The notes: generated by a model from the sequence alone, not told the origin. A DNA stretch of 57,365 nucleotides from Octopus bimaculoides (GCF_001194135.2 NC_068984.1:24752080-24809444), one strand, 5' to 3'; counted from the stretch's first letter, positions 7,368-32,000 are shown. A program made the numbers and translations.

Positions 7368-7370
<3 letters not shown>

Positions 7371-7447
<77 letters not shown>

Positions 7448-10755: not shown

Positions 10756-11994
10756 CATGTGAAGATCGCTTGAAAAGGTACTGACCAAGATACTCCCATG
10801 GAATGTGACCAAACGAGGTTTATTTCTCAACAGGCTTCATCTTCTTCTTGTGCACACACTTCTTCCATCGGTGTTGCAGTGCTTGAAGTCCATTGGTGAA
10901 GACGCTTTCATCTTGTTGCTCAAACAAATTATCAGCAACTGATATGACGTCACCGTCACTGCGATACTGGTTCACAGCTAAGTGTTTTTTCATGTTGGCG
11001 ACAGATGATAGTCCGATGAGGCCAAATCAGAAGAAAAGGGAGAGTGATCAACCCATTCAAAGCCACAGTCACGCACAGCGGCTATTGAGACCAAAGACTT
11101 GTGTGCTGGAGCAAAGTCCCGATGAAACCATATCCCTTTCGCCAGTTATCCTCGGCGTTTGAGCTTGTAGTCTTTCGTAACTGCCTCAGCGAGCTGGCGT
11201 AGTACTTTCCATTGATGATGTGACCCTTTTGAACATAGTTAATAGACACAATACCTTTTGCATCCTCAGATGAAACGACCTTCTCTGGAGCAGGTGAAGA
11301 GGGTGTTTCCAATGCATGGATTACCTCTTTGTCGCTGGTTCAAAGTGATGAATCTCATTCTGGCTTAGGAAACGTTCAAGGAAACCAGCAGGATCTGCTT
11401 CAAACAATGTTAGCTTTTCCCGTGATGTCATCAGCCTAGTACACTTTCGATGAGGTGCCAGAAGACGTGGCACCCACCAAGCAGAAACCTTCGTCATGCC
11501 AAGTTCATTGTGCAGAATATTCTCAACTCTCTCACAGAATATGCTAATAATATTGGCTATTTGATTTATGGTCAATCGAGTGTCATCCATCAGCATGTAG
11601 TGAACACGATCAATGTTTTCTTCGGTGGTGGCAGTTGCAGGACGTCCAGATTTGGGGTCAACTTCAAGACTCTCCCTTTCCCCTCCTAAATTCATCTTCA
11701 CACTTTTGCACTGTTGGTATAGCTAGACCGTCATCCCCTAATGTAGAAACCATGTCAGCATGAATGACCTTGAGGCTAAGCTCTTTTTCTGCAAGTATTT
11801 GATAACAACACGATGCAAAATTTTGTCTATTTTGAAGAGAGGTTGCGACTAGTTACTTTTGAAGTCTCCTTTGAAAAGTCGTCAGCTTACTTGGAAAGAA
11901 ACAATGTAGTTATAATAAGAAGGATTGAAACAAATGCGTGAAAGATTTTACTGCTTTAGCATCACTCCTTCATGAACTTTTTAGCGCACTTCCG
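10756..11994 (-). mobile_element. Near-full-length degenerate mariner, copy M1
   Basis: TA-flanked degenerate TIRs; peptides ESLEVDPKSGRPATA, GMTKVSAWWVPRLL, IHHFEPATKR, HSPFSSDLASSDY; stops and frameshifts. Confidence 0.93.
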
Positions 11995-12984
11995 TACAAT
12001 ACACCATCATACCAGCACACAACACACTTTCCAACTGTTTCATCTCTAACATCTCCAAGGAACATTTAACTTTATTAACAACCAACTCATTTCAGATATG
12101 TAGACACTGGGCTTTCCAAATCCCCCGTAGGGGTGCCGGTGTAGATATCTATTTCTTCCCATTCCTCTAAAACTTATTTTGTTTGATTGTTACTGTTGCT
12201 GTTGTCGTCTTCGCTACTTTTGGTACGGATGTTGTTATTTTCTGGTTTGCTTACAGTGTGTTTCCTTTTTATTATAGTTGTAGCAGAAAGCTTTCAAATG
12301 CCCTACAATTGTAGCATTTCAACTTTCAGACTCCAAAATATTCCCGCTTGTCTTTAATTTACTACCAGGAGAGATCAATACTGAGAGGAACAGAAAAAAA
12401 ATACTTTGCGTTACTTCAGGTTTCAGGTTTCAACTGTACTATTATCATCAACTGAATCCCTCGTAGTGCATTATGGATAGTGTTTTTCATTCTGTGACAA
12501 CTCGTGGAAGTACAAGTTAATGAAGTTCTTCTGAGACTCAAGGAACGATGAATTTTTGTTTTCTCTTTTCTTTTATAAAACAAATATTTCTGCCGACCAG
12601 TGGCTGCCTACCTACTATCAGAAATAAATTAATTCCCACAAATTTCTCAGAACTTTCCGACCATTTTTTATTTTTCTATTTAAACAACTGTAAATAGTCT
12701 TTCATAGAGACCAATTTATTTCGTTATTTCAAAACTCTGAACGTAAGACTCGGCAAATCTTTATTGTTGAACCTCGGATTAGTGCTGTATTCAACGGTTA
12801 GTGGATCTAGTAAAGGAAACAGTTCGATGAGTGTTAATTAATGTCGTTGTTGCTATTATCGTGGTTATTACTGTTGATTTCATTATTCTTATTCATTTTG
12901 TAGTTCTTGGTATTTCAAAGTAATTTGGCGTTGTCGATGCTATAATTACTGCTGTCCTCATCTTCACCACTGTTGCTTTTATTA

Positions 12985-13130
12985 TTGTTGAACCCCTAAT
13001 CATTCCTGATCGAGCAAACCTTATCGTCTGTTTTCAGGCAAATTGTATCTGACGTTACATTATCCAATGTGTATCTCCGTTTTTTTAGATGGTAGAGTGT
13101 GATTTCAAGGAGTTACGTCAGCTATCTCTT
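12985..13130 (-). mobile_element. Family D repeat
   Basis: CCTGATCGAGCAAACC...ACATTATCCAATGTGT...TAGATGGTAGAGTGTGATTTCAAGGAG. Confidence 0.55.
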
Positions 13131-13179
13131 GTAAATAAATAATTTAATATAAATTGAATAATCAATGAAAAAGAATTAA

Positions 13180-13373
13180 TCTTTCTAATTGTGGCACAAA
13201 GCCATCAGTTTTGATGGGAAGGGGCAAGTCGATTATCGCGACCCCAGTATTTGACTGGTACTTATTGATCCCGAAAGGATTAAAGACGAAGTCGACCTCA
13301 GAACGTAAAGAGCCGAAAGAAATGTCGCTAAGCATTTTGTCCGACACACCAACGCTTCTGCCAGCTCGCTGCT
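13180..13373 (-). mobile_element. SINE family A, copy 7 (internal deletion)
   Basis: Colinear; lacks the GGCGGAATTTGAACTC segment. Confidence 0.82.
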
Positions 13374-13884
13374 TTAATGAAATCGAACAATGAAAACTGA
13401 ATCGGATAATGAATAGTGAAGTTGCTTTAAACCATTGCATATAATGCATAAATTACATCAAAAGCTGACTGATGCTCTGCTATAGCATGATCGCTATCAG
13501 TTGCAGAAAGAACGTATTTCTATCAACTAACTGACCGGGTAATAAAACTGAAGTAAACATAACCAGAAGGGTAAGTGTGCTTTTATCCGCGGCATGAACC
13601 TCCCTAAATACAATAAATACTAGTGACGTATCAAGGCTGATATAGTCGACTATACTCTACTCCTCAAATGTGAAGCCTTGTGCGCCAATCTTAGGCATCT
13701 TTATGCTGCTTGTTGGTTTTATGTCACACTCTAGGAAAGTTAGTAACGAACGCACCCATAGGATCTAATATAGTTTGATGTAAATCATAAATCAACAGAA
13801 TTCTTTCAGTAGCTGAAGTTAGTGCAACTCCGGCGGCATGATACGAACCTATATCCATCTGTTCAACTATTTGTGACGTCTTTA

Positions 13885-14080
13885 TGTTGTTGCTGTTTAA
13901 CCCCAGGCCAGCACCGCTCATCTAACTCTACGATAAAAGACATACCGCTGATAAGTTTGCTGTCTCTTTGATAATCTAAGATTATATTGTTCAATATGTT
14001 CTTCTTTCTTATAAATTAGCTACGAGAAATTTGGGTAGATGTGACTGTTATTTCTAGCATGTTGCAGTCATATATATAGA
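13885..14080 (-). mobile_element. Family D repeat
   Basis: TTGTTGCTGTTTAACCCCAGGCCAGC...GTGACTGTTATTTCTAGCATG. Confidence 0.55.
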
Positions 14081-14754
14081 CTTTATCGTTGGTTCGCGTG
14101 ACTCTTTTATGGCGACGATGATTAATTAAAAGTGTCGGCGGAGGGGATAATATTTTATTCAAGTAATAATATTTTATACAACAATTGATATTTTATAAGC
14201 CAGATTTAATTTGCAAGAAACTATAATGGGAATTACAGGAAATAAAACTTGTTTGACGACATTGTTACAATGGAATATCATACTGTCTTTTGGTAACCAG
14301 AAACAATACAAAACATTTCTTTGTTAAACCGCAACGGACAATCCAATCAGGTGGACAACGTGTGGAGGCAGAAGCCAGATTTTTATGTATTGTTTAAATG
14401 AGAGGAAAGAAAAGCGATTAGGCCTGAAATGTGAAGATGCAAATGAGAAATAGAAAATACTCAGAAAAAGATTAGACAATTGTCTGTTCAAATTTGTAAA
14501 GGGAAGAGAAGACTTGTTAAAAAATAGCTCTTCAGTTAAGTGATCAATCAGATATAGATTTTTTTTTTTGTGTGTGTGTGCACGCTTTATTTTTCATATC
14601 TTTTTAAATGGGAGATTGAAAATTGTTTCTTTTGAATAGGTTTTGTAGATTTTAACTGCAACTATCACTTTGTTAATCCTGAATTGTATTCTGAAGATTT
14701 GTCAATAGCAGCAGCAAGAACACTGAAAATGTTTTGTACTATTTATCAAATAAT

Positions 14755-15292
14755 AATTCTTTCTAATTTCAGTACAAGGCCAGAAATTTTGAGGGGAGGA
14801 GGAAATCGATTAGATTGACGGCAGTGTTCAAATGGTACTTTTTTTTGCCAGCCCCAAAAGGGATAAAAGGCAAGGTCGACCTCGGAGGAATTTGAAATCA
14901 GAATGTAAAAATACCATCTCTGAAACCACGAACAAAATTACCCTATTGTACCAATTTGATATTCAGAGATCCTCACCTGTTCAACTGCTTACCCGAAGAA
15001 ATAAGAAGTATAAAGGGAAACTCTACTGAAACACTGGATAAATTCCTAACGATGATACTGGACCAGTCAAGCATTCAAGGATACACTCAAGGAAGATCAG
15101 CAGCTACAAACTCAATCATAGACTAACTTCCTGCCATAAAGTGACAATAATACCGATAGGAAATAAGTTAATGCGGTGCTCCAGCACGGTCGCAGTTCTA
15201 CGATTGAAACTATTAAAAGAATAGAAAAGAAGAACAAATCCTCCAAAGCATTTTTGCCCGACGTGCTAACGGTTCTGTCGGCTTACCGTCTT
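14755..15292 (-). mobile_element. SINE family A, copy 8, split by a LINE fragment (parts 14755-14910 and ~15229-15292)
   Basis: The left part ends ...GGAATTTGAAATCAGAATGTAAAA and the right part resumes ...AAGCATTTTTGCCCGACGTGCTAACGGTTCTG, colinear with intact copies. Confidence 0.78.
14911..15228 (+). mobile_element. 5'-truncated CR1-like LINE 3' end (ORF2 C-terminus plus 3' UTR)
   Basis: Open frame IPSLKPRTKLPYCTNLIFRDPHLFNCLPEEIRSIKGNSTETLDKFLTMILDQSSIQGYTQGRSAATNSIID* (stop 15124-15126), homologous to the C-terminus of the 53579-53995 ORF. Confidence 0.8.
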
Positions 15293-15543
15293 AATAGTAG
15301 TTCTGCAATTATCTCTGTTGGGAGGATAACTGAAAAAAAAAAATACCAAAGCCTATATGAGAAAGGCCTAATGCCTGATGAACCTAAAAGCAGTTGAAAA
15401 GTAAACAAAAAAAACAACAAAACAAAACAAAAACAGGAGAACGAAGGCCCAATTAATGATCAAGAAAGCGATTGACAAATTTATGCACCACGGGATCGAT
15501 TATAGAGAAGTGGACAATCTAGTCCCGCACTCAGAAAAGAGTA

Positions 15544-15968
15544 CCGTAAATCCTCGAGTATAGTCCGCCCTTGAGTATAATACGCAGGGAATTTTTAGGG
15601 GGCTGTACCTCTGAAAAACCTAAACCTTGTGTATAATACGCGCCCCTCCTCTAACTTGAGTCAAGGAGGTCTATATAACTTTCTTGGTTTATAAACGTAT
15701 ATACGGTAACGTCCTTTATTATCATTGTATATATAACATAAGGCAAACGTGTAGCGTTTTTGTGCACTTTGTTTGCAGAAAATAAAGAAATAACAGTAAT
15801 AAAGTCAGTGAAAAATAAATATTAAGTAAATTACCTTTACATATTTATCACTTAGAAAATTTTGCTTAGAAAATATTTTTCATTTTTAACCTCGTATATA
15901 GTACGCACTAAAAATTTTGACCTTTAAATTTTGGGAAAAAAGTGCGGATTATACTCAAGGATTTACGG
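15544..15968. mobile_element. Pogo/Tigger-like (Tc1/mariner superfamily) MITE
   Basis: TA|CCGTAAATCCTCGAGTATAGTCCGC ... GCGGATTATACTCAAGGATTTACGG|TA: 25-bp TIRs with 2 mismatches and a TA duplication; no ORF. Confidence 0.88.
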
Positions 15969-17285
15969 TATATACCAGGTAGGAAATGTGACGCATGATC
16001 GATTGTCTTGGAAAAACATTGTTATTTGTTTGCTCTCTATATTCTGAATAAGAAATACATAGTTCAACGACAGAACAGTGAAAAAATATTTTTATCATTT
16101 AGATACAGACATCTCCAGCTCGTTGGATTTCATGAGCGAACAAACAGCAAACAATTACAAGTTGTATTATAATCTTTCTGATCGTCCTGACATAATGTCG
16201 GAAAATATTTACAAGAGATCTCCGATCGCTGAAGCCACTTCATCAACTTCATCAATGATTTCCTCTCAATCATTTTCGATTACATACATTACTGTTGACG
16301 ATGTCAGTCTCCATTATTCTCTCTCCTTTCAGCTATACGCTTCAACGATTTTAAAATTCTGAAATAGTCAACTCAAATTCCATTTTCTATAACAACTACC
16401 TACACTGTATAAAACCTTCATGTACTCTGCCACGGAGTAATTACATTGTAAATCAAGGCTGAGGCGGGCAGCAGGAATAAGTGCCCTCGACTTCATACGT
16501 GTTCCCCAAAACCATTAAAACATAAAATGAAATATTAGATGGAATTAGATTAATCTCCATTTCTGCTACCCTAATTCGTTGAGGCATCTCAAAAACAGAA
16601 TTAGTTCCAAGATATTTGAAAATCTAACAAACATCACAGCAGAAAAAATCGTACCCCACCACATTAAGTCTGTATGTAAAATTGATATCTGTCAAGTGAA
16701 TGATATCGCTAGCTATACGAACTACACGAAACTGCTAGCTATACGAACCACACGAAACTGAATATTGAAACTTATGAAAAGGAACGGACGTCATCAACAC
16801 GCCAACTATGTGACCAACCAAAAGAAAAATATATAAAAAAAAAAGAAGTTACAAAAATCGCTGGTAAACACATGACCTACTCGTATCAGTCAATTTGAAC
16901 CGACGCCATCGACAACACAACCAACCACATAACCATTTACCACGACGCCAACAAATTTTAAAGACGAAAAGCAATAAACCCATTTCATTTTTTCATACAC
17001 TAAGAAGTATCCTTTCGATTAACATTAACCGCCGCATGCTTCCGTGGTAAATTTTCAATGCAAACAAATATGAACGTTTAGTCATCAATTTGTCCTAAAA
17101 TAACTATATATTCTATGGTAATGTGGCTTTCAATAATAAAAATCCCAAGTTTTAACTTTTCCGATTAGCCTAGTAGTTTTGCTTTAGCCTAGTATAATAC
17201 CTTGAATAAGCATCAAGGTCAAACTTCAAATGAGAGAGAATGATGTTTTTTTGTTCAATAATTATCGTGTTCTCAGTACTTACTA

Positions 17286-17644
17286 TGTTGGCTCTCCGTC
17301 GGTTACGACGACGAGGGTTCCAGTTGATCCGATCAACAGAACAGCCAGCTCGTGAAATTAACGTGCAAGTGGCTGAGCACTCCACAGACACGTAAACCCT
17401 TAACGTAGTTCTCGGGGGAGATTCAGCGTGACAAGGCTGGCCCTTTGAAATACAGGTACAACAGAAACAGGAAGAAAGAGTGAGAGAATGTTGTGGTGAA
17501 AGAATACAGCAGGGTTCGCCCCCCCCCCTGCCGGAGCCTCGTGGAGCATTAGGTGTTTTTGCTCAATAAACACTCACAACGCCCGGTCTGGGAATCGAAA
17601 CCGCGAGTCCGCTGTCCTAACCACCGGGCCATTGCGCCTCCACT
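17286..17644 (-). mobile_element. tRNA-derived SINE (family C) with an 11-bp target-site duplication
   Basis: Reverse-complement head GGCGCAATGGCCCGGTGGTTAGG...GGTTTCGATTCCC (A/B boxes); AGTACTTACTA at 17275-17285 and 17645-17655. Confidence 0.88.
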
Positions 17645-17699
17645 AGTACTTACTAACTGCATCAATATTAAATTGTTTCCAATTAACGTTTTAATTTAA

Positions 17700-18760
17700 A
17701 GTAAGTGTAAGTAAACAAAATTTGGTAAGTCATTTATTTGCCGCTCTTGCTGATTTGTATCTCATCCAAATCGTTATTACAGTTTTCCTCCTTGTTCGCA
17801 GCCTTGGCTTATTCTCAAAGAGCATGTTGGCGAATCCACACACTTTTTTCAGATTACAGTTGGTCAGATTAAGTGTGAGACCATCTGCTGAAATACGACT
17901 TGCACTAAATAAATTTCTGTCCATCAATCTTACGCAAAAAAAAAACGTTTATGAACTCTATGGCGTAATAGTATACGCTTCCTCCTTCATTTGCTCCAAA
18001 CAGGAGAAATTAGAACCCTAGCAACATATACTACAATGGATGCAGAAGTCTCGAGCCGAGAGTCGATCTTGAAGATTTATATAGAAAAATTATCCCAAAT
18101 TTTACTGAAAGAAAATTGACTGCTGACGAAATCAAAATTAAACCTTATCTCCGAACAAAAAGAAAAAAATCAACAGAAGAGTAAGACTAACTCTTATTGA
18201 AGACTATGATGAATCATTGGAGAACGCCCGAGATTATTTTCGTAATGACTCCGATGAACATGAATCTGAATTCAAACAATGTATTAGTTGTTCATTCGGT
18301 GATTGCTGAAGCATGAAAGCGGTTTGACACTAGCCACAATTCATGGATTAGTCTACACTCGGTGACAATATCAGAAGTATGACGGAAGTAGAGCTCAGCA
18401 GTTCCAAGAAAAGACAAAAACCTTCACTTAGAATTTATTCCTAGGTAAGGACTTTCTTTACTCTTTTTGTGTTTGTTATTCAAGTGTTTATACCATTTTT
18501 GCGGAGGTTTTGGCTGGTGAATAGGCACAGAAAAATGATAGAAATAAATTCCTGATCGTACTTGGAGACTGCAAGATTTTAGTCTCTTCCAAAGTACTCT
18601 TCCCGGATGTATAATCTTCCACGTGGCATCTTTTCTGGTAAGCTTCACGGTAAGTTGAGAACAATTCAAGCAACTGTTATGAGATCTCGGAACGAAGTTG
18701 GAAGATGTTTATGCAAGAGCTGTCTCAAACTAACACAAGCTATAAAAAGTTTTCTTGAAA
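17700..18760 (+). mobile_element. Possible highly degenerate hAT transposase remnant
   Basis: LFPDVYNL...KLRTIQATVMRS resembles the hAT C-terminal dimerisation domain (SKLKLIKTYLRS); the rest is frame-broken. Confidence 0.35.
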
Positions 18761-19490
18761 AAGATTATATCCTTAAACACAAAGTACGCAATTTCAAATA
18801 CCATAGAAGATAAAATATATAAATATATTTCATTGCTTTACTTTCACATTTATATCTATTGATACCAAATTATGCTTTCTTAAATTAGTCTACCTTTATC
18901 TGTAACAATACCGGGAGACATTTCTATTTCGCACAAAGCTATTGCTATTTAAAAAAAGAACATCTTCAAAAGGTTAGTACACTGTTTCAAATACTATCGA
19001 AGATGGAAAGCAATTTGTTTCACGTCTCAGTTCCTCATTTAAAAAAAAAATGATAATAAATGTGATACAATTATTGAAAATAATAATTTTCAATCTTGCA
19101 TTGATTTGAAACCGTATACAAATTTCTCGAAGATATGACAAAGTAGAATTTAAATAATGATAGCATTGCAAATATATTCAGATATATTCAAATATATTCA
19201 AATATATTCACTCTCTCTCTCTTCTGTATGAGTAGTGTGCGTATCATGAAAGGAGAAAGAGGTTATTGAAAGACCAGGGGAGAAAGAAAACTAGTTTGGT
19301 CTAGCAAAGTGACAACGTTTCTGTACCTCACACTAATACACCTATACTTCTACAAAGAGACCTCGGGCCCAGAGTTTTTTATGCTTGAAATTGGCTGTAT
19401 TTGGATCTCTTCGGGAAATTTGCAAAGGAGTTCTTAAAGAACTGGTCACATTGTTTCAAGACAAACACTGACGCTTATATATATATATAT

Positions 19491-20211
19491 NNNNNNNNNN
19501 NNNNNNNNNNNNNNNNNNNNNNNNNNNNNNNNNNNNNNNNNNNNNNNNNNNNNNNNNNNNNNNNNNNNNNNNNNNNNNNNNNNNNNNNNNNNNNNNNNNN
19601 NNNNNNNNNNNNNNNNNNNNNNNNNNNNNNNNNNNNNNNNNNNNNNNNNNNNNNNNNNNNNNNNNNNNNNNNNNNNNNNNNNNNNNNNNNNNNNNNNNNN
19701 NNNNNNNNNNNNNNNNNNNNNNNNNNNNNNNNNNNNNNNNNNNNNNNNNNNNNNNNNNNNNNNNNNNNNNNNNNNNNNNNNNNNNNNNNNNNNNNNNNNN
19801 NNNNNNNNNNNNNNNNNNNNNNNNNNNNNNNNNNNNNNNNNNNNNNNNNNNNNNNNNNNNNNNNNNNNNNNNNNNNNNNNNNNNNNNNNNNNNNNNNNNN
19901 NNNNNNNNNNNNNNNNNNNNNNNNNNNNNNNNNNNNNNNNNNNNNNNNNNNNNNNNNNNNNNNNNNNNNNNNNNNNNNNNNNNNNNNNNNNNNNNNNNNN
20001 NNNNNNNNNNNNNNNNNNNNNNNNNNNNNNNNNNNNNNNNNNNNNNNNNNNNNNNNNNNNNNNNNNNNNNNNNNNNNNNNNNNNNNNNNNNNNNNNNNNN
20101 NNNNNNNNNNNNNNNNNNNNNNNNNNNNNNNNNNNNNNNNNNNNNNNNNNNNNNNNNNNNNNNNNNNNNNNNNNNNNNNNNNNNNNNNNNNNNNNNNNNN
20201 NNNNNNNNNNN
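19491..20211. other. Assembly gap inside a (TA)n tract (other gaps: 22414-23221, 27254-27367, 33953-34074, 35331-35340, 46407-46710)
   Basis: Runs of N. Confidence 0.99.
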
Positions 20212-22095
20212 TATATATATATTGGTTCTTCACCCAATGTATTCGTTAATTACACCGCTTATATTATCTATCACAAAATATTGCTGAAATCTTACAATAC
20301 AATTTTGCTAACCGAAAGAACAACAATAATATCGATCATACTGTCTGTTATAGTTTGCAATTGCTAAGTATTTCTTCAACATGTATATCCCCTGAAAAAT
20401 TCTTAACTTTTTCTTCAAGGATGGAAACGTGTTTCAGGCCTTGATTCAAAAAGGCATAACAAAAATGCAAAGGGTGAATAATGATATAAAAGCAGGAAAT
20501 ATTATCATATTTATGGCTACTATAACCACTGTTGACAACCTCGTCAGAAAGTCTACTTCACCTCCGAGTCTACGTCGCTTTTGTGAATACGAACAGTAAA
20601 ATTATAAAGGGTAAGTCATTATTATATTCATTACATAACTGAGAAGTTTAGTAATATACTAAAGGCAAATTGTGATTATTTATAATATACACAATCGTAG
20701 TCAATTGATTATTGTTGGAACCTCCAAAACGCTGTTGAAAGAAAATGCTGCTTGGCTTCTATACACTTAAAAATCCATATATACCAAACTTATTACTCTA
20801 CTCACATAGTATTGATGCAACTTAAGATACACAGTTTCCAAACTGTCTGACAGAATGTAAGAAAAATTATAAATAAAACCAAATACCCGAAATATATGGC
20901 TCATTCAGTTATACTTAAAGGAAAACGAATTATTGATTTTACTTCATTGTTGATGTATTTTGTTTCAAAATGTCACTCGTTTGGCAGACTGGTTATTTTT
21001 TAAACATAAATTTGATTATTGCAATCTAATCCTCATATGAAATTTTGAGAAGAGCAGGAAATAGCTTATAAACCACTTTATAGAATAATGTTATATATTG
21101 TCATATTAAAGCGTTAATATGTTTTGTGTCGCAAATATTAAAAATGCTAAATTGAAAAGTTAGCAACTTCGATTCTCTATGATGTTTGTGCAATTTGAAA
21201 TTAGTTGGGCTCTTTTGAAGTTCATAGCATTTCTGCTATGAATGTGACTGTAAACGAAAATCATCTTAGCACTTAGTGTTCAAAACTTAATAGAATGACT
21301 ATAATTTTGTTACTCTGTCACAACTCCTACAGTTCGTAAGGAATAAAAAATAAAACATAATCGAGATAATCACCCTCATCCCCCAGTTCTCATTTTATTG
21401 ACTTCTTGTTTGGTAAAGACCAGTGTTAGCCAATGTGAGATGTGTATTTGTAATGTGGGGGGAACGATAGTAAATATTGTTCGACATTTCGTCCAGCATC
21501 CTAAGGCTTAAACACATAATGGTACTGAATAAATTTTACTATATCATATAGACGACAATAACTAAATACACAACCTTTCAGGTCATATATATATATTTAT
21601 CGTTCAACCTAACTGATAATTTGTTAGCTAATCTAATAGATTATCTCCTAATACAAAGTTTGAATGTAACAAATCAATTCGGCTATTAAAAATGACACAC
21701 ATAGCAATAATATATTTCAAGTATACATAAATTATCTAATCCAAACCAGGGTCTTGATTTTCCTGCAAATGCGACCACTGAATTATAATACCGATGCTAA
21801 GGCAATACTTGAAGATAATTCCAATGATTATCTTTTCTAATAATTCCTCATGATAATTCCAATGATTATCTTTTTTTTTTTAATAAATAATTTAAAATAA
21901 AACAAGAGTATCTACAACATGTGAGTTTACAGATTAAATTTTCCAAAACTATATCCATAGGTTGGAATGGCTTAAAAAGCAGATGAATGAAAAATTAAAA
22001 TAGCAATCTACTGGCATATACTTATTGATTAACTGTTATATATTGCACATATTGGTTTCTTTTGACTAAACATAGGTCAGTTGTTATTCATGAAA

Positions 22096-23567
22096 TCTAT
22101 ATATATAAAAATGAGAATGTGTGTGTGTGTGTCTGTCTGTCTGTCTGTCTGTGTGAATCCCTAAAACTCGAGAACTACGCAACCACTTTCATTCAAATTT
22201 TACACATGCCTTACTTAGGGTTCCAGTTGTGTTTTAGTAAAAAAAAATTATTAACTTCTTGCAGAGTTCGAGCACACGGCAACATAATATCTCCTCCACT
22301 ATTTAAGTATTACGTGTCAAAAGTGAAACAAAAACACTCATGTCAAATACTTTCACTTTAAAAATGAAACTATTCCACTAACTGAAACAATCACATTTCG
22401 ATACTGTAGTGACNNNNNNNNNNNNNNNNNNNNNNNNNNNNNNNNNNNNNNNNNNNNNNNNNNNNNNNNNNNNNNNNNNNNNNNNNNNNNNNNNNNNNNN
22501 NNNNNNNNNNNNNNNNNNNNNNNNNNNNNNNNNNNNNNNNNNNNNNNNNNNNNNNNNNNNNNNNNNNNNNNNNNNNNNNNNNNNNNNNNNNNNNNNNNNN
22601 NNNNNNNNNNNNNNNNNNNNNNNNNNNNNNNNNNNNNNNNNNNNNNNNNNNNNNNNNNNNNNNNNNNNNNNNNNNNNNNNNNNNNNNNNNNNNNNNNNNN
22701 NNNNNNNNNNNNNNNNNNNNNNNNNNNNNNNNNNNNNNNNNNNNNNNNNNNNNNNNNNNNNNNNNNNNNNNNNNNNNNNNNNNNNNNNNNNNNNNNNNNN
22801 NNNNNNNNNNNNNNNNNNNNNNNNNNNNNNNNNNNNNNNNNNNNNNNNNNNNNNNNNNNNNNNNNNNNNNNNNNNNNNNNNNNNNNNNNNNNNNNNNNNN
22901 NNNNNNNNNNNNNNNNNNNNNNNNNNNNNNNNNNNNNNNNNNNNNNNNNNNNNNNNNNNNNNNNNNNNNNNNNNNNNNNNNNNNNNNNNNNNNNNNNNNN
23001 NNNNNNNNNNNNNNNNNNNNNNNNNNNNNNNNNNNNNNNNNNNNNNNNNNNNNNNNNNNNNNNNNNNNNNNNNNNNNNNNNNNNNNNNNNNNNNNNNNNN
23101 NNNNNNNNNNNNNNNNNNNNNNNNNNNNNNNNNNNNNNNNNNNNNNNNNNNNNNNNNNNNNNNNNNNNNNNNNNNNNNNNNNNNNNNNNNNNNNNNNNNN
23201 NNNNNNNNNNNNNNNNNNNNNAAACACTGTCTGTAGCTGGTCTTCTCTTGGAAGAGCCCTGCTTCTCACATGGACAACTGTATGTTGGCTGCTCAAGAGT
23301 GGGCAGCAACAAAAAACCTATTTGTATATGCTCCACAAGGGAAAACAAGGAACATAGTTTACAATGAGGTGTTATAATCACAACAGCAAGAAAGTATGTA
23401 CATGATCACCTTCTTTTACGAAACTTCATTGACTTTCATATATATACGTGTGTTTGGGTGCGTGTGTGTATATACATCTCTATATATAAAGATGATGCGT
23501 AGTCTAGACGGCGTTTTTAGATTTCATTACTCTCTTTAACCCGGGCAACGCCGGGTATTTCTGCTAG
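22096..23567 (+). mobile_element. Helitron (rolling-circle transposon), probably non-autonomous, with a helicase C-terminal remnant
   Basis: A|TCTATATATATAAAA 5' end; after the gap TLSVAGLLLEEPCFSHGQLYVGCSRVGS then (+1 shift) NLFVYAPQGKTRNIVYNEVL* (Pif1-like helicase motif); hairpin ACCCGG-GCAACG-CCGGGT at 23539-23556; CTAG|T 3' end. Confidence 0.93.
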
Positions 23568-24150: not shown

Positions 24151-24183
<33 letters not shown>

Positions 24184-26478
24184 TATATACATATATATAT
24201 ATATGTTTCATATTTTGAATCGTTGATATTACTTCCAGTAACATTGTTTGTTATAAACGACATAATCGAATTGATCAAATACTTTATTCAATAAAGTAAA
24301 TGTTTTATCTACAGAAATGTTAAATTCTGCTTTCGAGATAAAATTACTTTACTAGAAATGAAAACTTAAGTCAGAGGTTATAGATTTACCATAAGTAGTA
24401 ATTTATATGGTAAAGGAAATTAAATCCTACCAACACTCTATAATAGTTAAGTGTCAAAGAGATCACATGTTAATTCTATAAAAATGTAAAATTATTTACT
24501 ATTTTGATTTAAGTTATAAGAAATTTCAGTTGTTTATATAAAATTATGGTTACATTTCATCTGTTGTACATTAAATAGTAAATTTCTGTCTTTTGTATTT
24601 CAGTATATTTTAAACTTTTTCTTTTCTTTTTTTGACTGTGTACAAAATAAAGAGACTTGATATAGACATATCTAATAGATAGGTACCGTACGACAGGTTA
24701 AACGCTGGCTTGGAGAGCTTAACTCATTCCAGTTTGATTTATAGATGTACTATGGCTTGACTTTTAACGAAATCTGCTTATAATGTTACAATATATTTCT
24801 ACAATAACGAGTTCTGAACAGTACATGCAAAGAACCCATCATAAACGATAAAACGGAGAAAGAATGGAAATACTAGATAATCCGGAAATATTTGTGGCAG
24901 TGATAATTATTGGGCTTTTATAGCACTGATTTATTTAGAAATGATGCAACAAACATTACAAGAATGGTTTTTTAACCCTTTCCTTGTTATTTGTATTAAT
25001 CTTCAAAATCTTTTTACCGATATTTTTACTTAGGTAAAAACAACACTAGAATATCGAAACCTCGATGCTGGTTTTAGAAAAGAAAGAAGAGCCCCTCCCC
25101 TACAAACATTTGCACACAATACACACGCAAATGTTTGTAAAGTAATTAGCTCTGTGATGCATTGTGAGTTTTTGAAAATATGGCAATTCCAGGGAATTGC
25201 AGATGGTGCTTGATGAGCGGTACATTGAATCAGATGACTCTAAATTACATCTTTGTTAGTTTCGGCTTCAACAGATCGTGTCTGTGATCATTTAACTAAC
25301 ATTCTTGTTGTTTTATTCCACAAGCCTTTTAAGCATAACGAATGCATTAATTTTCAGTGAGATGACATCCTTGATGATTATTTTCGATAGGAAATCAGAG
25401 CCACAATTTCGTTCATCTGAATAAATCCGACTCCTCATTCAAATATTTCCACTTTTCCCTGTGAGTTGTGATTAACTTCATAGGCATCTCATAAATTTCT
25501 TCATGCATTCTTTTTGAAACTTTAGAATTGCAGTTTGATATTATAAAATGTTTAAAATTATATTGAAGGCATCAAAAGGTGTTATAGGGTATGGATTCTG
25601 TCCTGTGTCATGTACCTGACCTGAGGTTATCGCTTGTAATGTAATTGTAACAAACTATGTGTCTTGTTCTATATGTACTGATAACGTTTACTCAAACCTG
25701 TCTCACCTTAAAACTAGCAAGTCTAGTGCTGCCATTATCCTCTGAATACAGTGCCCCGCAATTTTGTACTTGTTTCATCTTCTATCTTTTTGTTTTCTTG
25801 TAATTACGTTGGGAAGATGAATCACATAAAATTTGTACAAACTATGTTAATTTCTTCTTGCTTTTTAAAGGGATATTGAAAATGCAAAATAATTAAATTT
25901 TCCATTAAAATATAGACATTAATGCGATCTTTATGATGTAATAAAATATACAATTTACAGAGAAACAAATAAGTGTAAATGTAAATTTGATATTGTTTTA
26001 TAGAATACATTCTATTCGTTCGATTGATGAAAAGATACGAAATTATAATAAATTAAAGCTATTGCTTACAAATAGATCACGTATTAATTTCATCAACTGA
26101 TGAGCAGCAGACAAGGTTTTATGAAAATGTAGGATGTATAATTGATGCTTTGACCCGAGGCGTTTAGAATTGGCTTCAAGGTACAACCGAGAAAACTGAA
26201 ATAACTAAACACGTGCAATATACTTGAAACCAAGGCCTATAAGTTGATAATTCATACACCTAGATTTCATTTCTTGTTTGCAAAGTGATAAGGCATGTAT
26301 TTGACAGGCTATAACAAAACCTTAAATGTAATGGATTATCATAGTAAAAGTCATCAAATTGATTTCCTACATAGTTGGAAGGCCCCATTTTTGTAAGAGA
26401 AATGAGATTGTGTCACGTTCATGTCCACCGAAATCTTTCAGGCAAAACATAAAGTTCCAGTCAATATGAATTTTATAC

Positions 26479-26512
<34 letters not shown>

Positions 26513-26988
26513 AACGCACATATATGTATGTACATGCATACGAGATGGTTGAATATGTGTGTGTATATATAATACACATGCATTTGCGTACTTTCTCACT
26601 CACACACATATCCCACGATTTCAAGTATGTATGGTTCTATACGAAAAACATTCATTTCATGACATACATGTCCAAACGTATATGTATACATTTAAAACTA
26701 AAAGCACAAATGTACACACGCACGTGCATACATATGTACATACATGTGTGTATGCACATATGTATACGTACATGTATGCATTCATAAATATAGCCTTCAT
26801 TTGCGAAATAATGTTTGAGTTGTTCTTAATAGCTAGGCAGCAATGTATTCTGCAAAACCGATTTTATTCCAGCTTGTCATAAACTGCACATAAAAAATTC
26901 AAAATGCCTTTTAGTAGTGGCAAATAAATATGATTGATGTAAGCAACACGCGGCTGAACAGTTATCAATTTTCGGTTATTAACTGCAG

Positions 26989-27030
26989 AAGTATTTTATC
27001 TGACGCCGAGATACTTGCACAGGCGCCATT
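26989..27030 (+). CDS. Candidate 42-nt exon of an unidentified host gene
   Basis: TTATTAACTGCAG acceptor, ATT|GTAAGT donor, more GC/CpG-rich than its flanks; open frames SILSDAEILAQAP or VFYLTPRYLHRRH. Confidence 0.22.
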
Positions 27031-27220
27031 GTAAGTTGGTGAATGTATCTCCATATTTGTAGAACAAGGACATTACAATTATGGAGAGAGAAACAACTTT
27101 GCTTATCTCTTTTAAAAAATCATTAAATTTAAATGGTAGGATTTAATAAAGATAATTTCAGTACCACTGAAGACATCTTGTTGTATTGCAAATATTCGGC
27201 TCAGCAAGTTCAATTTTAGG

Positions 27221-27253
<33 letters not shown>

Positions 27254-28214
27254 NNNNNNNNNNNNNNNNNNNNNNNNNNNNNNNNNNNNNNNNNNNNNNN
27301 NNNNNNNNNNNNNNNNNNNNNNNNNNNNNNNNNNNNNNNNNNNNNNNNNNNNNNNNNNNNNNNNNNNCACACATACACACATGCACATACACACACACAC
27401 ACACACTATATACATCAATAAATGTGATCATTAAATCTCGTATAGTCATATATTTTTCTCTCAATTGAAAAATGAGAATTTTGCAGCCTTTAAAGGTTTT
27501 TTTTTAACTATAAATCTCTCTCCATTTTTTCAACGCCTACTTGTTATGATTCAACCTTCCCTTCATTGTTAATAAACAATATGTAATATCTGGCCAAAGT
27601 AATTTAGTTCCGGGTACTAGCTTGTTGCGAATAACTATTTTCCACTGCATACCTTTTTATACGCATCACCGTTTAATTTTAGTTACCAATCCAAACTCTG
27701 GCACAGGGTTTCGATTTTTTTTAATACTTAAAACAAAAGTGTACAAGTGCATTTATCGCTCTCTTACCACCCCTTTTCATTACCTTTGGGAGCGGTGCCG
27801 CCCATTTTTATAAACAATGATTTAAAACTATTGCATCAATATCTACAAAGTAAATCTCTTTATTTTGGAATCTCAAATAGTGATTTTTTTAAACTTTACC
27901 GACTATAACAGTTACCAAAAGAGGCATCTAAAGAGGACTGGAGGGTGTGTATTATATATATGACTATTAAAAATAAATTTATCTATTGTTTCAATACAGA
28001 ATCCGCGTCTCTCTTAATTCCCAAAATATTTAGAAAAAATTATGTTGTAATTTTGTAGAATTTGCTTACAGCAGACACTTCATGACAGTTTAGTTCTTAG
28101 CTAAAACAACAAATGAAAGGAACTTATATTTTCTCATCTTGAACACTTAAAAGCCTACAACCCTTAAAAGTCCAATGACATTTTCCTGTTATAACTATCC
28201 TTTATATTTAATAT

Positions 28215-28431
28215 CCTTTCTACTATAGGCACAAGGCTTGAAAATTTGGGGGAGGGGACTGGTCAATTACATCCGCCCCAGTATTCAACTGGTACTTAGT
28301 TTTATCGACCCCGAAAGGATGAAAGGTAAAGTCGACCTCGGCGGAATTTGAACTCAGAACGTCTTTAAGACGGACGAAATGCTGCTAAGCATTTTGCCCG
28401 GCGCACTAACGATTCTGCCAGCTCACCACCT
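28215..28431 (-). mobile_element. SINE family A, copy 9, with a perfect 19-bp target-site duplication
   Basis: TATCCTTTATATTTAATAT at 28196-28214 and 28432-28450; among the least degenerate copies. Confidence 0.92.
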
Positions 28432-29544
28432 TATCCTTTATATTTAATATGAAGTTTATAAGTAATACTTTTTTATCTTTAGCAAATTACTATATCTTAT
28501 GAAATACTAGTTTAAATAAGTAAGATTAATATTTCTATAGAAAAAAACCTTTTTTTTTAAAATTAAGTTTAACTTTTCAAATAAAATGTTGTCGCTCTAG
28601 TCACAAAGTTCAATAATAAAGTATGAGTTGTAATTCCACTCTGGAACGAACCGTACCTACAACTTAAAGTCATTAAAACAAATACCAGTAACAAACTAGT
28701 ATTTATGAAAAACAAATTTAAATGACAACGAGCTTTTTTGTCCTGCCTAAGAGTTGAAGACATAGACAAAGTAATTTAATAAACAAAACAAAAAACACAC
28801 TCTGATATTAAAACAATTTATCCTCAACTTTGGTCATCATCGTGATGACACTGATGGCCGCATATAGTATTTTTTATTGAATCTATCCACCATTGTTGGT
28901 ATTTATTCAGACTTTACTGATAACAAGGAAATAAATCTCTGTGGTGTGCGGCTTTCATTGATATCGGTGCTTTCAATCATAATTTAGTTACACACCATTA
29001 TCTATTATGGAGATTATAAAAGATAATCTACAAAGTTTATGGCCAAGCCTTAGCTGTTCTTGGCCGGAACTATCTTTGATTAGTGATGTCAGATAAATTT
29101 TGATTCATGATATTAAGATTGAATCAACACTCTTGATAACAGTTTTCCAATTATAAGCATTGATTATTCAGATTCTGTAGTGACAAAGTGGGTATTTTAC
29201 ATATAACTGACGATGTGAACAAGATAGGGGAAATACTTTCTGTCATCAACGATGTATCCATCCTAAGTAACGTATTATTATATAAACAGTCGCATTGTAT
29301 CAAGAAGTATGGTGCATCATGAAATATCAAACCTGCTCTCGACTGAAATAAGAATACTGAAGTATGGAATGATAAACACTTGTTGAGGAATCGGTAGACT
29401 TTATTAAACATGTTAATCTTATTAATTTTGAACAAAGGCGAGTGCGTCCCTCACTTATGATAGCCAGGTAATGAAAATGCGTAAAGTTTAAAGGAAATAG
29501 GCGATGTAAGTGAAATAACTTTAAACGGAAATCAAAGTGGAACG

Positions 29545-29815
29545 ATGATGATAGTAATGATCATGATGGATGATGATGGCAATGAGAGACGACGATAGTG
29601 GGGTTGATGATTACAGCGGTGGTTGGAAGGATATTATTGATGACAATGGTTAACGATGATGGTGCTGGTAATGGTAATGATGACGAGTGATGATATTGAT
29701 AAATGATTGATGATAGTGGTGGTGATTTCGATGAAGGCAACAAAAGTAATGATGAAGAATGAAAATGATACGTGATGGCGATGGTGATAATGACAATGAC
29801 GACGAAGATGAAGTG
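29545..29815. repeat. Degenerate (GAT)n-rich low-complexity tract
   Basis: Direct reading. Confidence 0.8.
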
Positions 29816-30544
29816 TAAAAGTGGAATTCAAACAATAAGAATGTAAATGCTGCTGGGAAAATACCAGGAGATTTGGGATTAGAACTCACTAGAGAGACGA
29901 TATCTCACTGTATTAGTTTACAAATCATAGAACTAAGTTATAAATATGACAGTCCACAGAAATTTTATGTTTGATTGCATGGAAAAGTGATAAGTCGAAT
30001 GTTACAGAGGATCTTGTCCTTCAAAGAAATGTAGAGAAAGACCGAGGCGTTATTAGCTTAGCTGTTGTACAATGTACAGCTTACTAGTTTCCACTATTTC
30101 TAGCCTTTTTGCTGTCTCACAACCAAGTTATTGGTTATTTTAGACTACAAATATTGGCAATAAGGGAAGTCTAACGCCTTAACTCATCGACAATGAAATA
30201 ATAAAAACTAATGAGTATCTCGGGAGATATGAAATTAGAGCGTTGAATTTCGAAGAAAGGATGAAAACGATGAGAAAAAGGACAGGAATGGGAAACGGAG
30301 AAACAGGAGAGAGAAAAAAGAAAGGAAGAAAACGAATAAGCAGGAGGAGGAGGAGGAGAAAAGCAGATGAAAGTGGATGATCATAATATGTTCACAACGA
30401 TGAAAGAATTGAACGCTACGAAAACGGAGCAAAAACAAGAGGATACAAAAACAATGATATAAAGACGAAATTGAAAAAGAAGATGGGTTAGTGAATTAAA
30501 CAACTCCCACACATCATAAATCTATTTCATACTTACTTTAATAT

Positions 30545-30753
30545 TGGTTTCAAATTTTGGTACAAGGCCAGCAATTTCGTCAGAGAGGCTAAGTCAATTA
30601 CATCGACTCCAATACTCAACTGGTTACTTATTTCATCGACAACGAAAGGATGAAAAGCTAAGTTAACATCGATGACAGTTGATCACAGAATGTAAGGACG
30701 GACGAAACGCAGCTAAACATTTTGTCCGGTGTGCTAACGATTCTGCCGGCTCG
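30545..30753 (-). mobile_element. SINE family A, copy 10
   Basis: Colinear with copy 1. Confidence 0.8.
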
Positions 30754-30884
30754 TAATATTCAAAGAGGTTTTAGTTCCTTCATTTTGAGAGCACAATCCA
30801 ACTTTTATAATAACTATCACCACTATTTACAATTTAAAATAAACATATAAAATAATACTCATTTATATGCAAATGTATATTATA

Positions 30885-32000
30885 CGAGGATGGGCTGAAG
30901 AGTTCATAGGCTGACTATGAAGGAGTGATGCTAGAGCTGTGAAATCTTGCCTGCATTAATTTCAGCTCTTCTCTTAACTATGTTGTTTCTTTCCAGGATA
31001 ACTGACATCTGATTTTTCAAAGAAGACTTCAAAAGTAACTAATAACGACTTCTCTTGAATATGGAAAAATTCGGCACCGTAGTGTTACCAAGTACGTGCA
31101 GGAAAAGGGTTTAGCCCCCAAGGACATTCATGCTGACATGGTTGCCGCCACATTAGGGGATGACGCTTCAGCTGTATTAACAATGAAAAAGTGGGCAGCT
31201 GAACTTAGGGGTGGGGAGAGTCTTGAAGTTGACCCCAAATCTGGACGTCCTGCAACTGCCACCACCGAAGAAAACATTGATCATGTTCACTACATGCTGA
31301 TGGATGACACTCGATTGACCATAAATCAAATAGCCAATATTATTAGCATATTCTGTGAGAGAGTTGAGAATATTCTGCACAATGAACTTGGCATGACGAA
31401 GGTTTCTGATTGGTGGGTGCCACGTCTTCTGATCGAAAGTGTACTAGGCTGATGACATCACGGGAAAAGCTAACATTGCTTGAAGCAGATCCTGCTGGTT
31501 TCCTTGAACGTTTCTTAAGCCAGAATGAGATTCATCACTTTGAGCCAGCGACAAAGAGGTAATCCATGCATTGGAAACACCTCTCTTCACCTGCTCCTAA
31601 GAAGGTCGTTTCATCTGCAAGGAAGGTGACGGCCTAATTTTGGGGATGCAAAAGGTATTGTTTCTATTGACTATCTTCAAACGGATCGCACCATCAGTGA
31701 AGAGTACAATGCCAGCTTGCTGAGGCAGTTACGGAAGTCTACTAAAAACCAAACGCCGAGGAAAACTGGCGAGAGCGGGCTTGTTTCATCAAGACAATAC
31801 TCCAGCACACAAGTCTTTGGTTTCAATGGCTGCTGTGCGTGACTGTGGCTTTGAACGGTTTGATCAAACTCCCTTTTCTCCTGATTTGGTCCCATCTGAC
31901 TATCATTTGTCCTCTAACATTAAAAAGCATTTGACTGGAAACCAGTGTTGCAATTGTGATGACGTCATGTCAGCTGTTAACGATGTTTTTGACGAACATA
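30885..32000 (+). mobile_element. Degenerate mariner, copy M2 (same family as M1, 3' end truncated)
   Basis: TA|CGAGGATGGGCTGAAGAGTTCATAGGCTGAC TIR; peptides KGLAPKDIHADMV, SGRPATATTEENI, FHQDNTPAHKS, PFSPDLVPSDYHL. Confidence 0.93.

What the first reader, a model, noticed from the sequence alone, without database searches (positions are those of the whole stretch)
11267..31617. Sharply bounded ~400-bp near-identical tract between two old inverted mariner copies: ectopic gene conversion candidate
M1 (minus, 11267-11676) and M2 (plus, 31214-31617) differ by only 7 substitutions and 2 indels over ~404 bp (~98%, hand alignment). Adjacent homologous sequence is far more diverged: ~15 differences in 96 nt on the 3' side, and visibly worse on the 5' side. 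The tract shares inactivating lesions, including the premature TAA after ATKR and apparent small deletions, so independent transposition is unlikely. This fits recent non-allelic conversion or inversion-associated recombination between inverted repeats ~19.5 kb apart. If both lie in one pre-mRNA they would form a ~400-bp near-perfect duplex, a strong ADAR substrate in a lineage known for heavy A-to-I editing.
Basis: partly seen in the sequence, partly recalled or inferred. Interest (0 to 1): 0.72.

Follow-up and report, generated by a model that had tools for sequence, protein, structure and literature searches.

The report
Gene conversion between two mariner relics
Two old, dead mariner transposon copies in an octopus genome share a 400-base near-identical patch because one copy overwrote the middle of the other, which is a real but ordinary kind of event.

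Summary
M1 (minus, 11269-11676) and M2 (plus, 31214-31615) differ at 7 of 401 aligned bases plus two indels (98.3% identity). The homologous flanks are 82% identical. This contrast is not chance (Fisher p = 2e-18; maximum chi-square 66, against at most 29 in 300 permutations).

A related genome turned the candidate into a tested case. Locus L004 from Octopus sinensis is the orthologous region of window 20.9-51.6 kb and carries the M2 ortholog. M2 against that ortholog is uniformly 91.5%, 91.8% and 93.2% identical across 5' flank, core and 3' flank. M1 against it is 80%, 92% and 83%. So M1's core is the foreign piece: M2 was the donor and M1 the recipient.

M1 and M2 also share four derived substitutions and a 6-bp deletion that the O. 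sinensis copy and the other family copies lack. The transfer therefore happened after the two species split. There is no inversion breakpoint at M2, so this was a non-crossover patch.

Three things remain untested. The M1 ortholog could not be fetched. The scaffold join across gap 19491-20211 is unchecked, so the linkage and orientation of M1 and M2 are unverified. Co-transcription and ADAR editing could not be examined. The phenomenon is well known; interest is low to moderate.

The parts
10754..11996 (-). M1: decayed mariner-like element, the recipient copy. It is full length (about 1.24 kb including flanking TA dinucleotides), with degenerate terminal inverted repeats.
   Evidence: Homology to M2 and to ten other Octopus family copies. 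The stitched translation hits Pfam Transposase_1. TIR-like ends TA|CGGAAGTGCGCTAAAAAG and CTTCACATG|TA were located.
11269..11680 (-). Converted tract in M1: M2-type sequence replacing M1's own core. The maximal tract by chi-square scan is 11248-11680. The minimal tract by shared derived characters is about 11354-11599.
   Evidence: 98% identical to M2 and 92% to the O. sinensis M2 ortholog, against 80-83% in M1's flanks. Only 2 M1-private substitutions in 401 bp, against 45 in 598 bp of flank. Breakpoints.
30883..32000 (+). M2: mariner-like element, the donor copy. It is truncated at the 3' end at about 32000. Its 5' TIR begins TA|CGAGGATGGGCTGAAGAG at 30883.
   Evidence: An orthologous copy sits at the same site in O. 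sinensis (L004 about 9853-10945), with collinear unique flanks.
31213..31615 (+). Donor tract in M2.
   Evidence: M2 against its O. sinensis ortholog is 91.8% identical here, the same as its flanks (91.5% and 93.2%). This segment is therefore M2's own.
31616..31640 (+). A 25-bp segment present in M2, in O. sinensis M2 and in other family copies, but absent from M1 (junction at M1 11269/11268). It marks the 3' edge of the tract.
   Evidence: Alignments; coordinates.
11677..11692 (-). 5' edge of the tract. M1 keeps its own 'GGAGGGGAAAG' form, with 4 bp that M2 and O. sinensis M2 lack.
11452..11458 (-). Seven bases kept in M1 and in O. sinensis M2 but deleted in M2 (junction 31431/31432). This change arose in the donor after the conversion, and it shows that M1's core is not a copy of the assembled M2 sequence.
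19491..20211 (.). Assembly gap between the M1 contig (5756-19490) and the rest, with (TA)n on both sides. The join is not verified.
   Evidence: L004 starts at window 20937.
22414..23221 (.). Assembly gap inside a lineage-specific insertion (22111-23567). The flanks are collinear with O. sinensis.
27254..27367 (.). Assembly gap in a TA/CA microsatellite. It is bridged by O. sinensis (L004 5536 to 5548).

Best explanation
M1 and M2 are two old, independently decayed insertions of one mariner-like family in an Octopus genome. Both were already present and about 17-20% diverged from each other. After this lineage split from O. sinensis, a lesion in the middle of M1 was repaired using M2 as the template. 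The repair was a non-crossover, non-allelic (interlocus) gene conversion, most simply by synthesis-dependent strand annealing. About 410 bp of M2 sequence were pasted into M1, carrying M2's stop codon and small deletions and erasing M1's own accumulated substitutions. The patch ends at two indel heterologies: a 4-bp one on the 5' side and a 25-bp one on the 3' side. Since then each copy has picked up a few private changes: about 6 substitutions and a 7-bp deletion in M2, and about 2-4 substitutions and a 1-bp deletion in M1. This gives today's 98% identity.

Shown: the tract, the direction, the timing relative to the species split, and the absence of a crossover. Inferred: the DSB/SDSA mechanism, the role of the indels in ending the tract, and the physical proximity of the copies.
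For: 1. The tract is sharp and highly significant.

2. L004 is the O. sinensis ortholog of window 20.9-51.6 kb, at about 87-93% identity, and it holds M2 at the same site.

3. M2 against its ortholog is 91.5 / 91.8 / 93.2% identical across 5' flank, core and 3' flank. M1 against that ortholog is 79.9 / 92.4 / 83.5%. Only M1 is mosaic.

4. Quartet-informative sites were polarised with 6-9 other family copies. In the flanks, 21-24 sites support (M2, sinensis M2), against 1 for (M1, M2). In the core, 4 support (M1, M2) and none support either alternative.

5. M1 and M2 share a 6-bp deletion that is absent from O. sinensis M2 and from all other covering copies but L009, which lacks this whole stretch through a larger gap.

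6. M1-private substitutions number 2 in 401 bp of core, against 45 in 598 bp of flank.

7. The M1-M2 core distance is 2.0%, against 8.2% for M2 and its ortholog. The event is therefore younger than the species split, roughly a quarter to a half of its age.

8. The core is not generally better conserved in the family. M2 against six other copies gives 0.71-0.82 in the core and 0.69-0.80 in the flanks.

9. M1's core keeps ancestral states where M2 has changed: five or six sites (5 by the three-way count, 6 when polarised against nine other copies) and the 7 bp. It is a separate sequence, not a duplicated read-out of M2.

10. Gene conversion among dispersed transposon copies, favoured by proximity, is well documented (PMC6598467).
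Against: The flanking homology (80-83%, longest exact match outside the tract 24 bp) is well below what is considered efficient for gene conversion in mammals. Those figures are about 92% overall identity and more than 200 bp of uninterrupted match (PMC3966225). The event is thus an inefficient, rare kind of repair, or it used another route.

The pre-conversion state of M1's core was not seen, because the O. sinensis M1 ortholog could not be fetched.

The M1 contig is joined to the rest only by a scaffold gap (19491-20211). Proximity, which would make the event more plausible, is therefore unverified.

The phylogenetic evidence alone cannot separate a real converted M1 core from a second M2 haplotype wrongly assembled into M1.
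Confidence: 0.78

Rival explanations
1. Replication-based template switch. A stalled or broken fork in M1 switched to the inverted homologous copy M2 by microhomology (MMBIR/FoSTeS-like, or long-range quasi-palindrome correction), copied about 400 nt and switched back. The sequence outcome is the same as gene conversion, but the route does not depend on long homology.
For: The flanks are only 80-83% identical, with exact matches of at most 24 bp. That is below the usual thresholds for homologous recombination (PMC3966225). The copies are scaffolded in inverted orientation. Both tract edges coincide with small indels.
Against: The patch is perfectly in register with homology at both ends, and the junctions carry no added or lost bases beyond the pre-existing indels. 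Known template-switch corrections involve arms tens to hundreds of bases apart, not about 19 kb. The orientation itself is unverified.
Confidence: 0.09
2. Assembly artefact. The M1 core in this gapped scaffold assembly was built from reads of the M2 locus, for example its second haplotype, by repeat collapse, gap filling or polishing.
For: The assembly is gapped and M1 and M2 sit on different contigs. A second M2 haplotype would also share the lineage-specific derived sites with M2. No independent assembly or read set of this species was reachable: there was no protein at 80% identity or more to the core ORF in 5.8 billion proteins.
Against: The two cores differ by 7-9 substitutions and two indels in 400 bp, which would be a very divergent pair of alleles. 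A chimera would need two joins exactly in register between sequences that share no long exact words outside the tract. Both copies lie in N-free sequence, and each core continues seamlessly into its own distinct flanks.
Confidence: 0.06
3. The donor was not M2 itself but another, unsampled copy very close to M2, such as a recent duplicate. Alternatively, M1 was already a chimeric element when it inserted.
For: Only this window and ten other family copies were available. The genome-wide family was not surveyed.
Against: M1's core carries changes that arose in the M2 locus lineage after the split from O. sinensis (4 sites and a 6-bp deletion). M1's flanks are old, with 24 and 21 private substitutions. 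All ten other copies are only 67-83% identical to the core. No protein above 79% identity exists in the database.
Confidence: 0.05
4. Transposase-induced excision of M1, followed by gap repair that switched template from the sister chromatid to M2 and back.
For: Template switching during gap repair after excision is established for cut-and-paste elements (own knowledge: P element, Tc1/mariner). The patch is in the middle of the element.
Against: At the time of the event M1 was already heavily decayed. Its terminal repeats are degenerate and one carries an 11-bp deletion, so excision is unlikely. No intact family member was seen.
Confidence: 0.02

Closest known systems
Non-allelic (interlocus) gene conversion between dispersed transposable-element copies (Alu, L1, HERV LTRs, yeast Ty)
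   Same: A short unidirectional patch of a few hundred bp. The tract and the flanks give incongruent trees. An old copy is partly overwritten by another. The event is favoured between nearby copies (PMC6598467, PMC4921805, PMC8230782).
   Different: This is a DNA transposon (mariner) in a cephalopod. The partners are far more diverged (80-83%) than the usual 92-95% or more (PMC3966225).
Arm-to-arm gene conversion in large inverted repeats and palindromes (e.g. primate Y-chromosome palindromes; own knowledge)
   Same: Intrachromosomal conversion between inverted copies that keeps them near-identical without inverting the spacer.
   Different: Those arms are more than 99.9% identical along their whole length through continual conversion. 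Here a single patch sits within otherwise diverged copies, and nothing suggests repeated events.
NAHR-mediated inversion between inverted repeats
   Same: The same substrate geometry: inverted homologous copies about 20 kb apart.
   Different: A crossover would leave hybrid copies, with one flank of each type, and an inverted spacer. Here both flanks of each copy are of its own type, and the M2 side is collinear with O. sinensis.
Inverted-repeat dsRNA substrates of ADAR (e.g. inverted Alu pairs in human introns and UTRs; own knowledge)
   Same: About 400 bp of near-perfect complementarity if both copies are transcribed on one RNA.
   Different: There is no evidence of co-transcription. The arms are about 19.5 kb apart, whereas edited Alu pairs are usually within 1-2 kb.

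Membership tests
Non-allelic (ectopic/interlocus) gene conversion event | A discrete tract with significantly higher identity than the homologous flanks | tested here: met
   98.3% against 82%. Fisher p = 2e-18. Maximum chi-square 66 against at most 29 in 300 permutations.
Non-allelic (ectopic/interlocus) gene conversion event | Phylogenetic incongruence: the tract groups paralogs within the species, while the flanks group orthologs across species | tested here: met
   Flanks: 21-24 sites support (M2, O. sinensis M2). Core: 4 sites plus a 6-bp deletion support (M1, M2), and none support the alternatives.
Non-allelic (ectopic/interlocus) gene conversion event | Unidirectional transfer: the donor is unchanged and the recipient's own history is erased | tested here: met
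   M2 against its ortholog is uniform at 91.5 / 91.8 / 93.2%. M1-private substitutions are 2 per 401 bp in the core against 45 per 598 bp in the flanks.
Non-allelic (ectopic/interlocus) gene conversion event | No exchange of flanking markers (non-crossover) | tested here: met
   Both flanks of M1 are M1-type and both flanks of M2 are M2-type. Window 27.9-33.7 kb is collinear with L004 across M2. The M1 side could not be compared with another species.
Non-allelic (ectopic/interlocus) gene conversion event | The pre-conversion state of the recipient is seen in an ortholog or another individual | not testable with these tools
   L004 starts 9 kb short of M1. Searches for annotated neighbours found nothing. 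Other O. sinensis copies fetched (L007-L010) are not the ortholog.
Non-allelic (ectopic/interlocus) gene conversion event | Usual precondition: about 92% or more overall identity and a long uninterrupted match between the partners (PMC3966225) | tested here: not met
   The flanks are 80-83% identical, with a longest exact match of 24 bp outside the tract. The pre-event identity of the core itself is unknown. This is a rate-limiting condition, not a definition.
Non-allelic (ectopic/interlocus) gene conversion event | The structure is confirmed by independent reads | not testable with these tools
   No reads or second assembly of this species were reachable.
mariner (Tc1/mariner superfamily) element | Mariner-type transposase domain | tested here: met
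   The stitched M1 translation hits Pfam PF01359 Transposase_1, E = 3.4e-5, 24.1 bits against a cut-off of 24. Relatives carry PF17906/PF13565 and are named Mos1 transposase HTH or SETMAR-like.
mariner (Tc1/mariner superfamily) element | D,D34D catalytic spacing | tested here: inconclusive
   Read directly from the M1 translation, 34 residues lie between the D of 'HRDFAPAH' and the D of 'SSDY'. The first D lies in the frameshifted region and was not located.
mariner (Tc1/mariner superfamily) element | Terminal inverted repeats flanked by a TA target duplication | tested here: met
   M1 reads TA|CGGAAGTGCGCT...CACATG|TA. The M2 5' end reads TA|CGAGGATGGGCTGAAGAG. Similar ends occur in L001. The repeats are decayed.
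ADAR-edited intramolecular dsRNA | Long near-perfect complementarity | tested here: met
   396 intermolecular pairs of about 402-408 nt, -772 kcal/mol.
ADAR-edited intramolecular dsRNA | Both arms on one transcript, with A-to-G clusters in RNA | not testable with these tools
   No RNA data were available. The only gene model at the orthologous locus starts in M2 and runs away from M1. No annotated exon was found on the M1 contig.
NAHR inversion between inverted repeats | Hybrid repeat copies and an inverted spacer | tested here: not met
   there are no hybrid flanks, and the M2-proximal spacer (20.9-30.8 kb) has the same orientation as M2's downstream flank, as in O. sinensis.

The most novel reading that the evidence does not exclude
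The patch was created by homology-poor repair between copies only about 80% alike. The resulting 400-bp near-perfect inverted repeat is now functional: M2 already supplies the first exon of a transcript in O. sinensis. If a longer transcript spans both copies, the pair would form a long hairpin RNA that feeds ADAR hyper-editing or small-RNA production in a heavily editing lineage.
Probability: 0.04. Interest if true: 0.65.

Novelty: new member of a known kind. Interest (0 to 1): 0.3.

Why it matters
This is a clean, datable example of non-allelic gene conversion between transposon relics in a cephalopod. The donor, the recipient, the tract ends and the relative age are all resolved by a cross-species ortholog.

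It has two practical consequences. First, such events make old copies look young in divergence-based repeat 'age' landscapes, and they can create chimeric subfamilies in repeat libraries. Second, conversion can occur between partners far below the roughly 92% identity usually quoted.

It does not reveal a new mechanism or a new element.

Tried and rejected
1. The first Pfam call failed because the frames contained stop codons. It was redone with a stitched translation.

2. I tried to fetch the O. sinensis ortholog of M1.
- P0005 is on the same chromosome but lies at 20.4 Mb, not 133.6 Mb.
- P0003, P0013 and P0014 are on other chromosomes, and their flanks do not match the window.
- A concatenated-ORF query over 5.8-20.9 kb exceeded the length limit.
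- The trimmed version covering 7.6-20.9 kb found nothing at E <= 1e-6.
- The same approach for 0.4-6.9 kb found nothing at E <= 1e-4.
- These searches only detect close relatives, so they show that no annotated or called ortholog is on record. They do not show that no gene is there.

3. I looked for a second assembly of the same species through the core ORF. The best hit was 79% identical, so there is none.

4. I tested whether the core is simply a better-conserved part of the family. It is not: 0.71-0.82 against 0.69-0.80.

5. I rejected selection on the core. It carries a stop codon, frameshifts and non-synonymous differences.

6. I rejected a crossover or inversion.

7. Repeats shared between the window and L001 or L003 did not identify the species. 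The window is an Octopus about 8% diverged from O. sinensis at neutral sites. O. bimaculoides is plausible, but this was not tested.


Full report
**1. Observation**

I read both copies and ran a self-BLAST of the window. It gives one inverted match, 10914-11973 against 31998-30917, at 83% over 1.1 kb.

A global alignment resolves this match into three parts:
- a 5' flank at 81.9% identity (235/287);
- a core at 98.25% identity (394/401), covering M1 11676-11269 and M2 31214-31615;
- a 3' flank at 82.3% identity (289/351).

The core holds 7 substitutions, a 7-bp indel and a 1-bp indel. The 5' side has 23 in 96.

The contrast is not chance. Fisher p is 2.4e-18. A maximum chi-square scan picks M1 11680-11248 with chi-square 66, while 300 permutations never exceed 29. 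Outside the tract the longest exact match is 24 bp; inside it is 125 bp.

**2. Assembly gaps**

The window has seven N runs. The three named in the finding (19491-20211, 22414-23221, 27254-27367) all lie between the copies. Both copies are in N-free sequence but on different contigs: M1 in 5756-19490 and M2 in 27368-33952.

The orthologous O. sinensis sequence (section 4) settles two of the gaps.
- Gap 27254-27367 lies in a TA/CA microsatellite and is bridged collinearly (L004 5536 to 5548).
- Gap 22414-23221 lies inside a window-specific insertion of about 1.46 kb (22111-23567). Its two flanks are adjacent in O. sinensis, and a short target-like duplication bounds the insertion.

Gap 19491-20211 has (TA)n on both sides. 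That repeat is its own reverse complement, so it carries no orientation information, and my comparison sequence does not cover the gap. The distance of about 19.5 kb and the inverted orientation therefore rest on an unverified scaffold join. The conversion inference itself does not depend on them.

**3. What the copies are**

The core ORF finds only Octopus 'uncharacterized', SETMAR-like and Mos1-HTH proteins, at 47-79% identity. A stitched M1 translation hits Pfam Transposase_1 at threshold.

M1 has decayed terminal repeats flanked by TA at 11996 and 10754. M2 has a 5' end TA|CGAGGATGGGCTGAAGAG at 30883 and is truncated near 32000.

Ten other family copies were fetched from O. bimaculoides, O. 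sinensis and ENA assemblies (L001-L003, L005-L010). They are 67-83% identical to M1 and M2. The family is old, and M1 and M2 are ordinary dead relics of it.

**4. The decisive comparison**

Protein P0027 (O. sinensis LOC115210591) led to locus L004, which is CM016862.1:133,576,718-133,610,315. L004 aligns collinearly with window 20.9-51.6 kb at about 87-93% identity and carries the M2 ortholog at the same site.

A three-way alignment gives these identities across 5' flank, core and 3' flank:

| Comparison | 5' flank | Core | 3' flank |
|---|---|---|---|
| M2 vs O. sinensis M2 | 91.5% | 91.8% | 93.2% |
| M1 vs O. sinensis M2 | 79.9% | 92.4% | 83.5% |

M2 against its ortholog is uniform, so M2 is not mosaic. 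M1 is mosaic, and its core is M2-lineage sequence. M2 is therefore the donor and M1 the recipient.

**5. Timing**

In the core, site patterns are 26 with M1 = M2 but not sinensis, 5 with M1 = sinensis but not M2, and 2 with M2 = sinensis but not M1.

I polarised these with six, then nine, outgroup copies.
- 17-18 of the 26 are changes in the O. sinensis lineage.
- Four (M1 positions 11599, 11579, 11443, 11411) are derived in the window lineage and shared by M1 and M2.
- A 6-bp deletion (M1 11355/11354, M2 31528/31529) removes the 'SW' of the conserved D-E-x-W motif. M1 and M2 share it. O. sinensis M2 and all other covering copies but L009 (which lacks this stretch through a larger gap) lack it.

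Quartet-informative sites in the flanks give 21-24 for (M2, sinensis M2) against 1 for (M1, M2). In the core they give 4 against 0 in the opposite sense.

M1-private substitutions number 24 and 21 in the two flanks but only 2 in the core, so M1's own history was erased there.

M2's changes since the split total about 2.5% in the core (4 shared plus 6 private), matching 2.3% in its flanks.

The transfer therefore post-dates the split. By distance ratio (2.0% against 8.2%) or by counts, it happened roughly a quarter to a half of the way back to the split.

**6. Non-crossover**

A crossover between inverted repeats would give hybrid copies and an inverted spacer. Each copy instead keeps its own type on both sides. 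The sequence on both sides of M2 is collinear and co-oriented with O. sinensis. The event is a patch.

**7. Tract ends**

The 5' end lies just inside a 4-bp indel where M1 keeps its own form (about 11677-11692). The 3' end abuts a 25-bp segment (M2 31616-31640) that M1 lacks. The chi-square optimum runs 21 bp beyond that point, but those bases are uninformative. That the heterologies stopped the tract is an inference.

**8. Rival explanations**

*Family-wide conservation of the core.* This is excluded. Other pairs show no such pattern.

*Many copies with the same core.* No protein above 79% identity exists among 5.8 billion, and the core carries M2-locus-specific derived states. A genome-wide DNA search was not possible, however.

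*Assembly artefact.* M1's core keeps five or six ancestral states and 7 bp that M2 has lost, and it has private changes of its own, so it is a distinct sequence. A wrongly placed second M2 haplotype would fit the phylogeny. It would, however, require alleles about 2% diverged with two indels, and two in-register joins without shared long words. I rate this at about 6%.

*Mechanism.* The flanking identity of 80-83% is below the roughly 92% identity and more than 200-bp uninterrupted match quoted for efficient conversion (PMC3966225). A replication-based template switch is a live variant with the same outcome, at about 9%.

*Excision-coupled gap repair.* This is unlikely, because M1's ends were already decayed.

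**9. The ADAR suggestion**

On one RNA the two tracts would pair over 396 bp at -772 kcal/mol. The only gene model at the orthologous locus begins inside M2. Its exon 1 is L004 10001-10294, corresponding to window 31066-31356, with a splice donor inside the core. It then runs downstream to window about 41.0 kb, away from M1.

No close match to any annotated protein was found on the M1 contig. Co-transcription is therefore unsupported, but it is not excluded.

**10. Comparison with what is known, and verdict**

Non-allelic gene conversion among dispersed transposon copies is well described for Alu, L1, LTRs and Ty, and it is favoured by proximity and identity (PMC6598467, PMC4921805, PMC8230782). 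This is a new, well-resolved instance in a cephalopod mariner family.

Its mildly unusual feature is the low identity of the partners. Novelty is limited.

Noticed in passing
window 31066-31356 and 40969-41067 (L004 10001-10294 and 22993-23073): The O. sinensis gene model LOC115210591 (129 aa) takes its first coding exon from the M2 ortholog, with a splice donor inside the converted core. Its second exon lies about 10 kb downstream. This is a transposon-derived first exon or promoter. The window versions are 76% identical at protein level.
   Followed up: partly
window 22111-23567: A lineage-specific insertion of about 1.46 kb, containing assembly gap 22414-23221, is absent from O. sinensis, where its two flanks are adjacent (L004 1581-1596 matches both sides). 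A TATATAATAAAT-like duplication bounds it.
   Followed up: partly
L004 1030-1344, 9481-9690, 12625-13128, 17285-17701; related to window 4413-4880: A repeat of about 0.3-0.5 kb, related to window 4.4-4.9 kb, is inserted at four places in O. sinensis that are empty in the window. This family was active after the species split. One insertion sits 38 bp upstream of M2.
   Followed up: no
window 50297-50431 and 41280-41366 (L004 31728-32250 and 23354-23640): Tandem units present once in the window are present four to five times in O. sinensis. This is a minisatellite copy-number difference between the species.
   Followed up: no
window 2114-2968 (-) and 40136-40426 (-): Two further mariner-like relics of a different family, hitting Pfam HTH_48 and Transposase_1.
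   Followed up: partly
window 53579-55684: Reverse-transcriptase (RVT_1) fragments lie on opposite strands (54164-54802 minus, 55352-55684 plus), next to a 138-aa ORF (53579-53995 minus). This is a rearranged or nested retroelement.
   Followed up: no
proteins P0004 and locus L006: A cichlid fish protein (Amphilophus citrinellus) is 73% identical to the M1 core ORF, as close as the Octopus paralogs. A Tara Oceans marine metagenome contig carries a copy 75% identical at DNA level. This may reflect horizontal spread of the mariner family, or contamination.
   Followed up: no
window 685-838, 855-1048, 1069-1283, 1586-1785, 8610-8816, 13181-13367, 14751-14906, 28207-28433, 30537-30753: At least nine copies of a SINE-like repeat of about 200 bp, 68-82% identical to each other, in both orientations. 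One copy lies about 130 bp upstream of M2.
   Followed up: no
window 19480-19490 / 20212-20222, 27230-27253 / 27368-27405, 46343-46406 / 46711-46740: The assembly gaps examined are bordered by TA or CA microsatellites. They probably mark unassembled simple repeats rather than missing complex sequence.
   Followed up: partly
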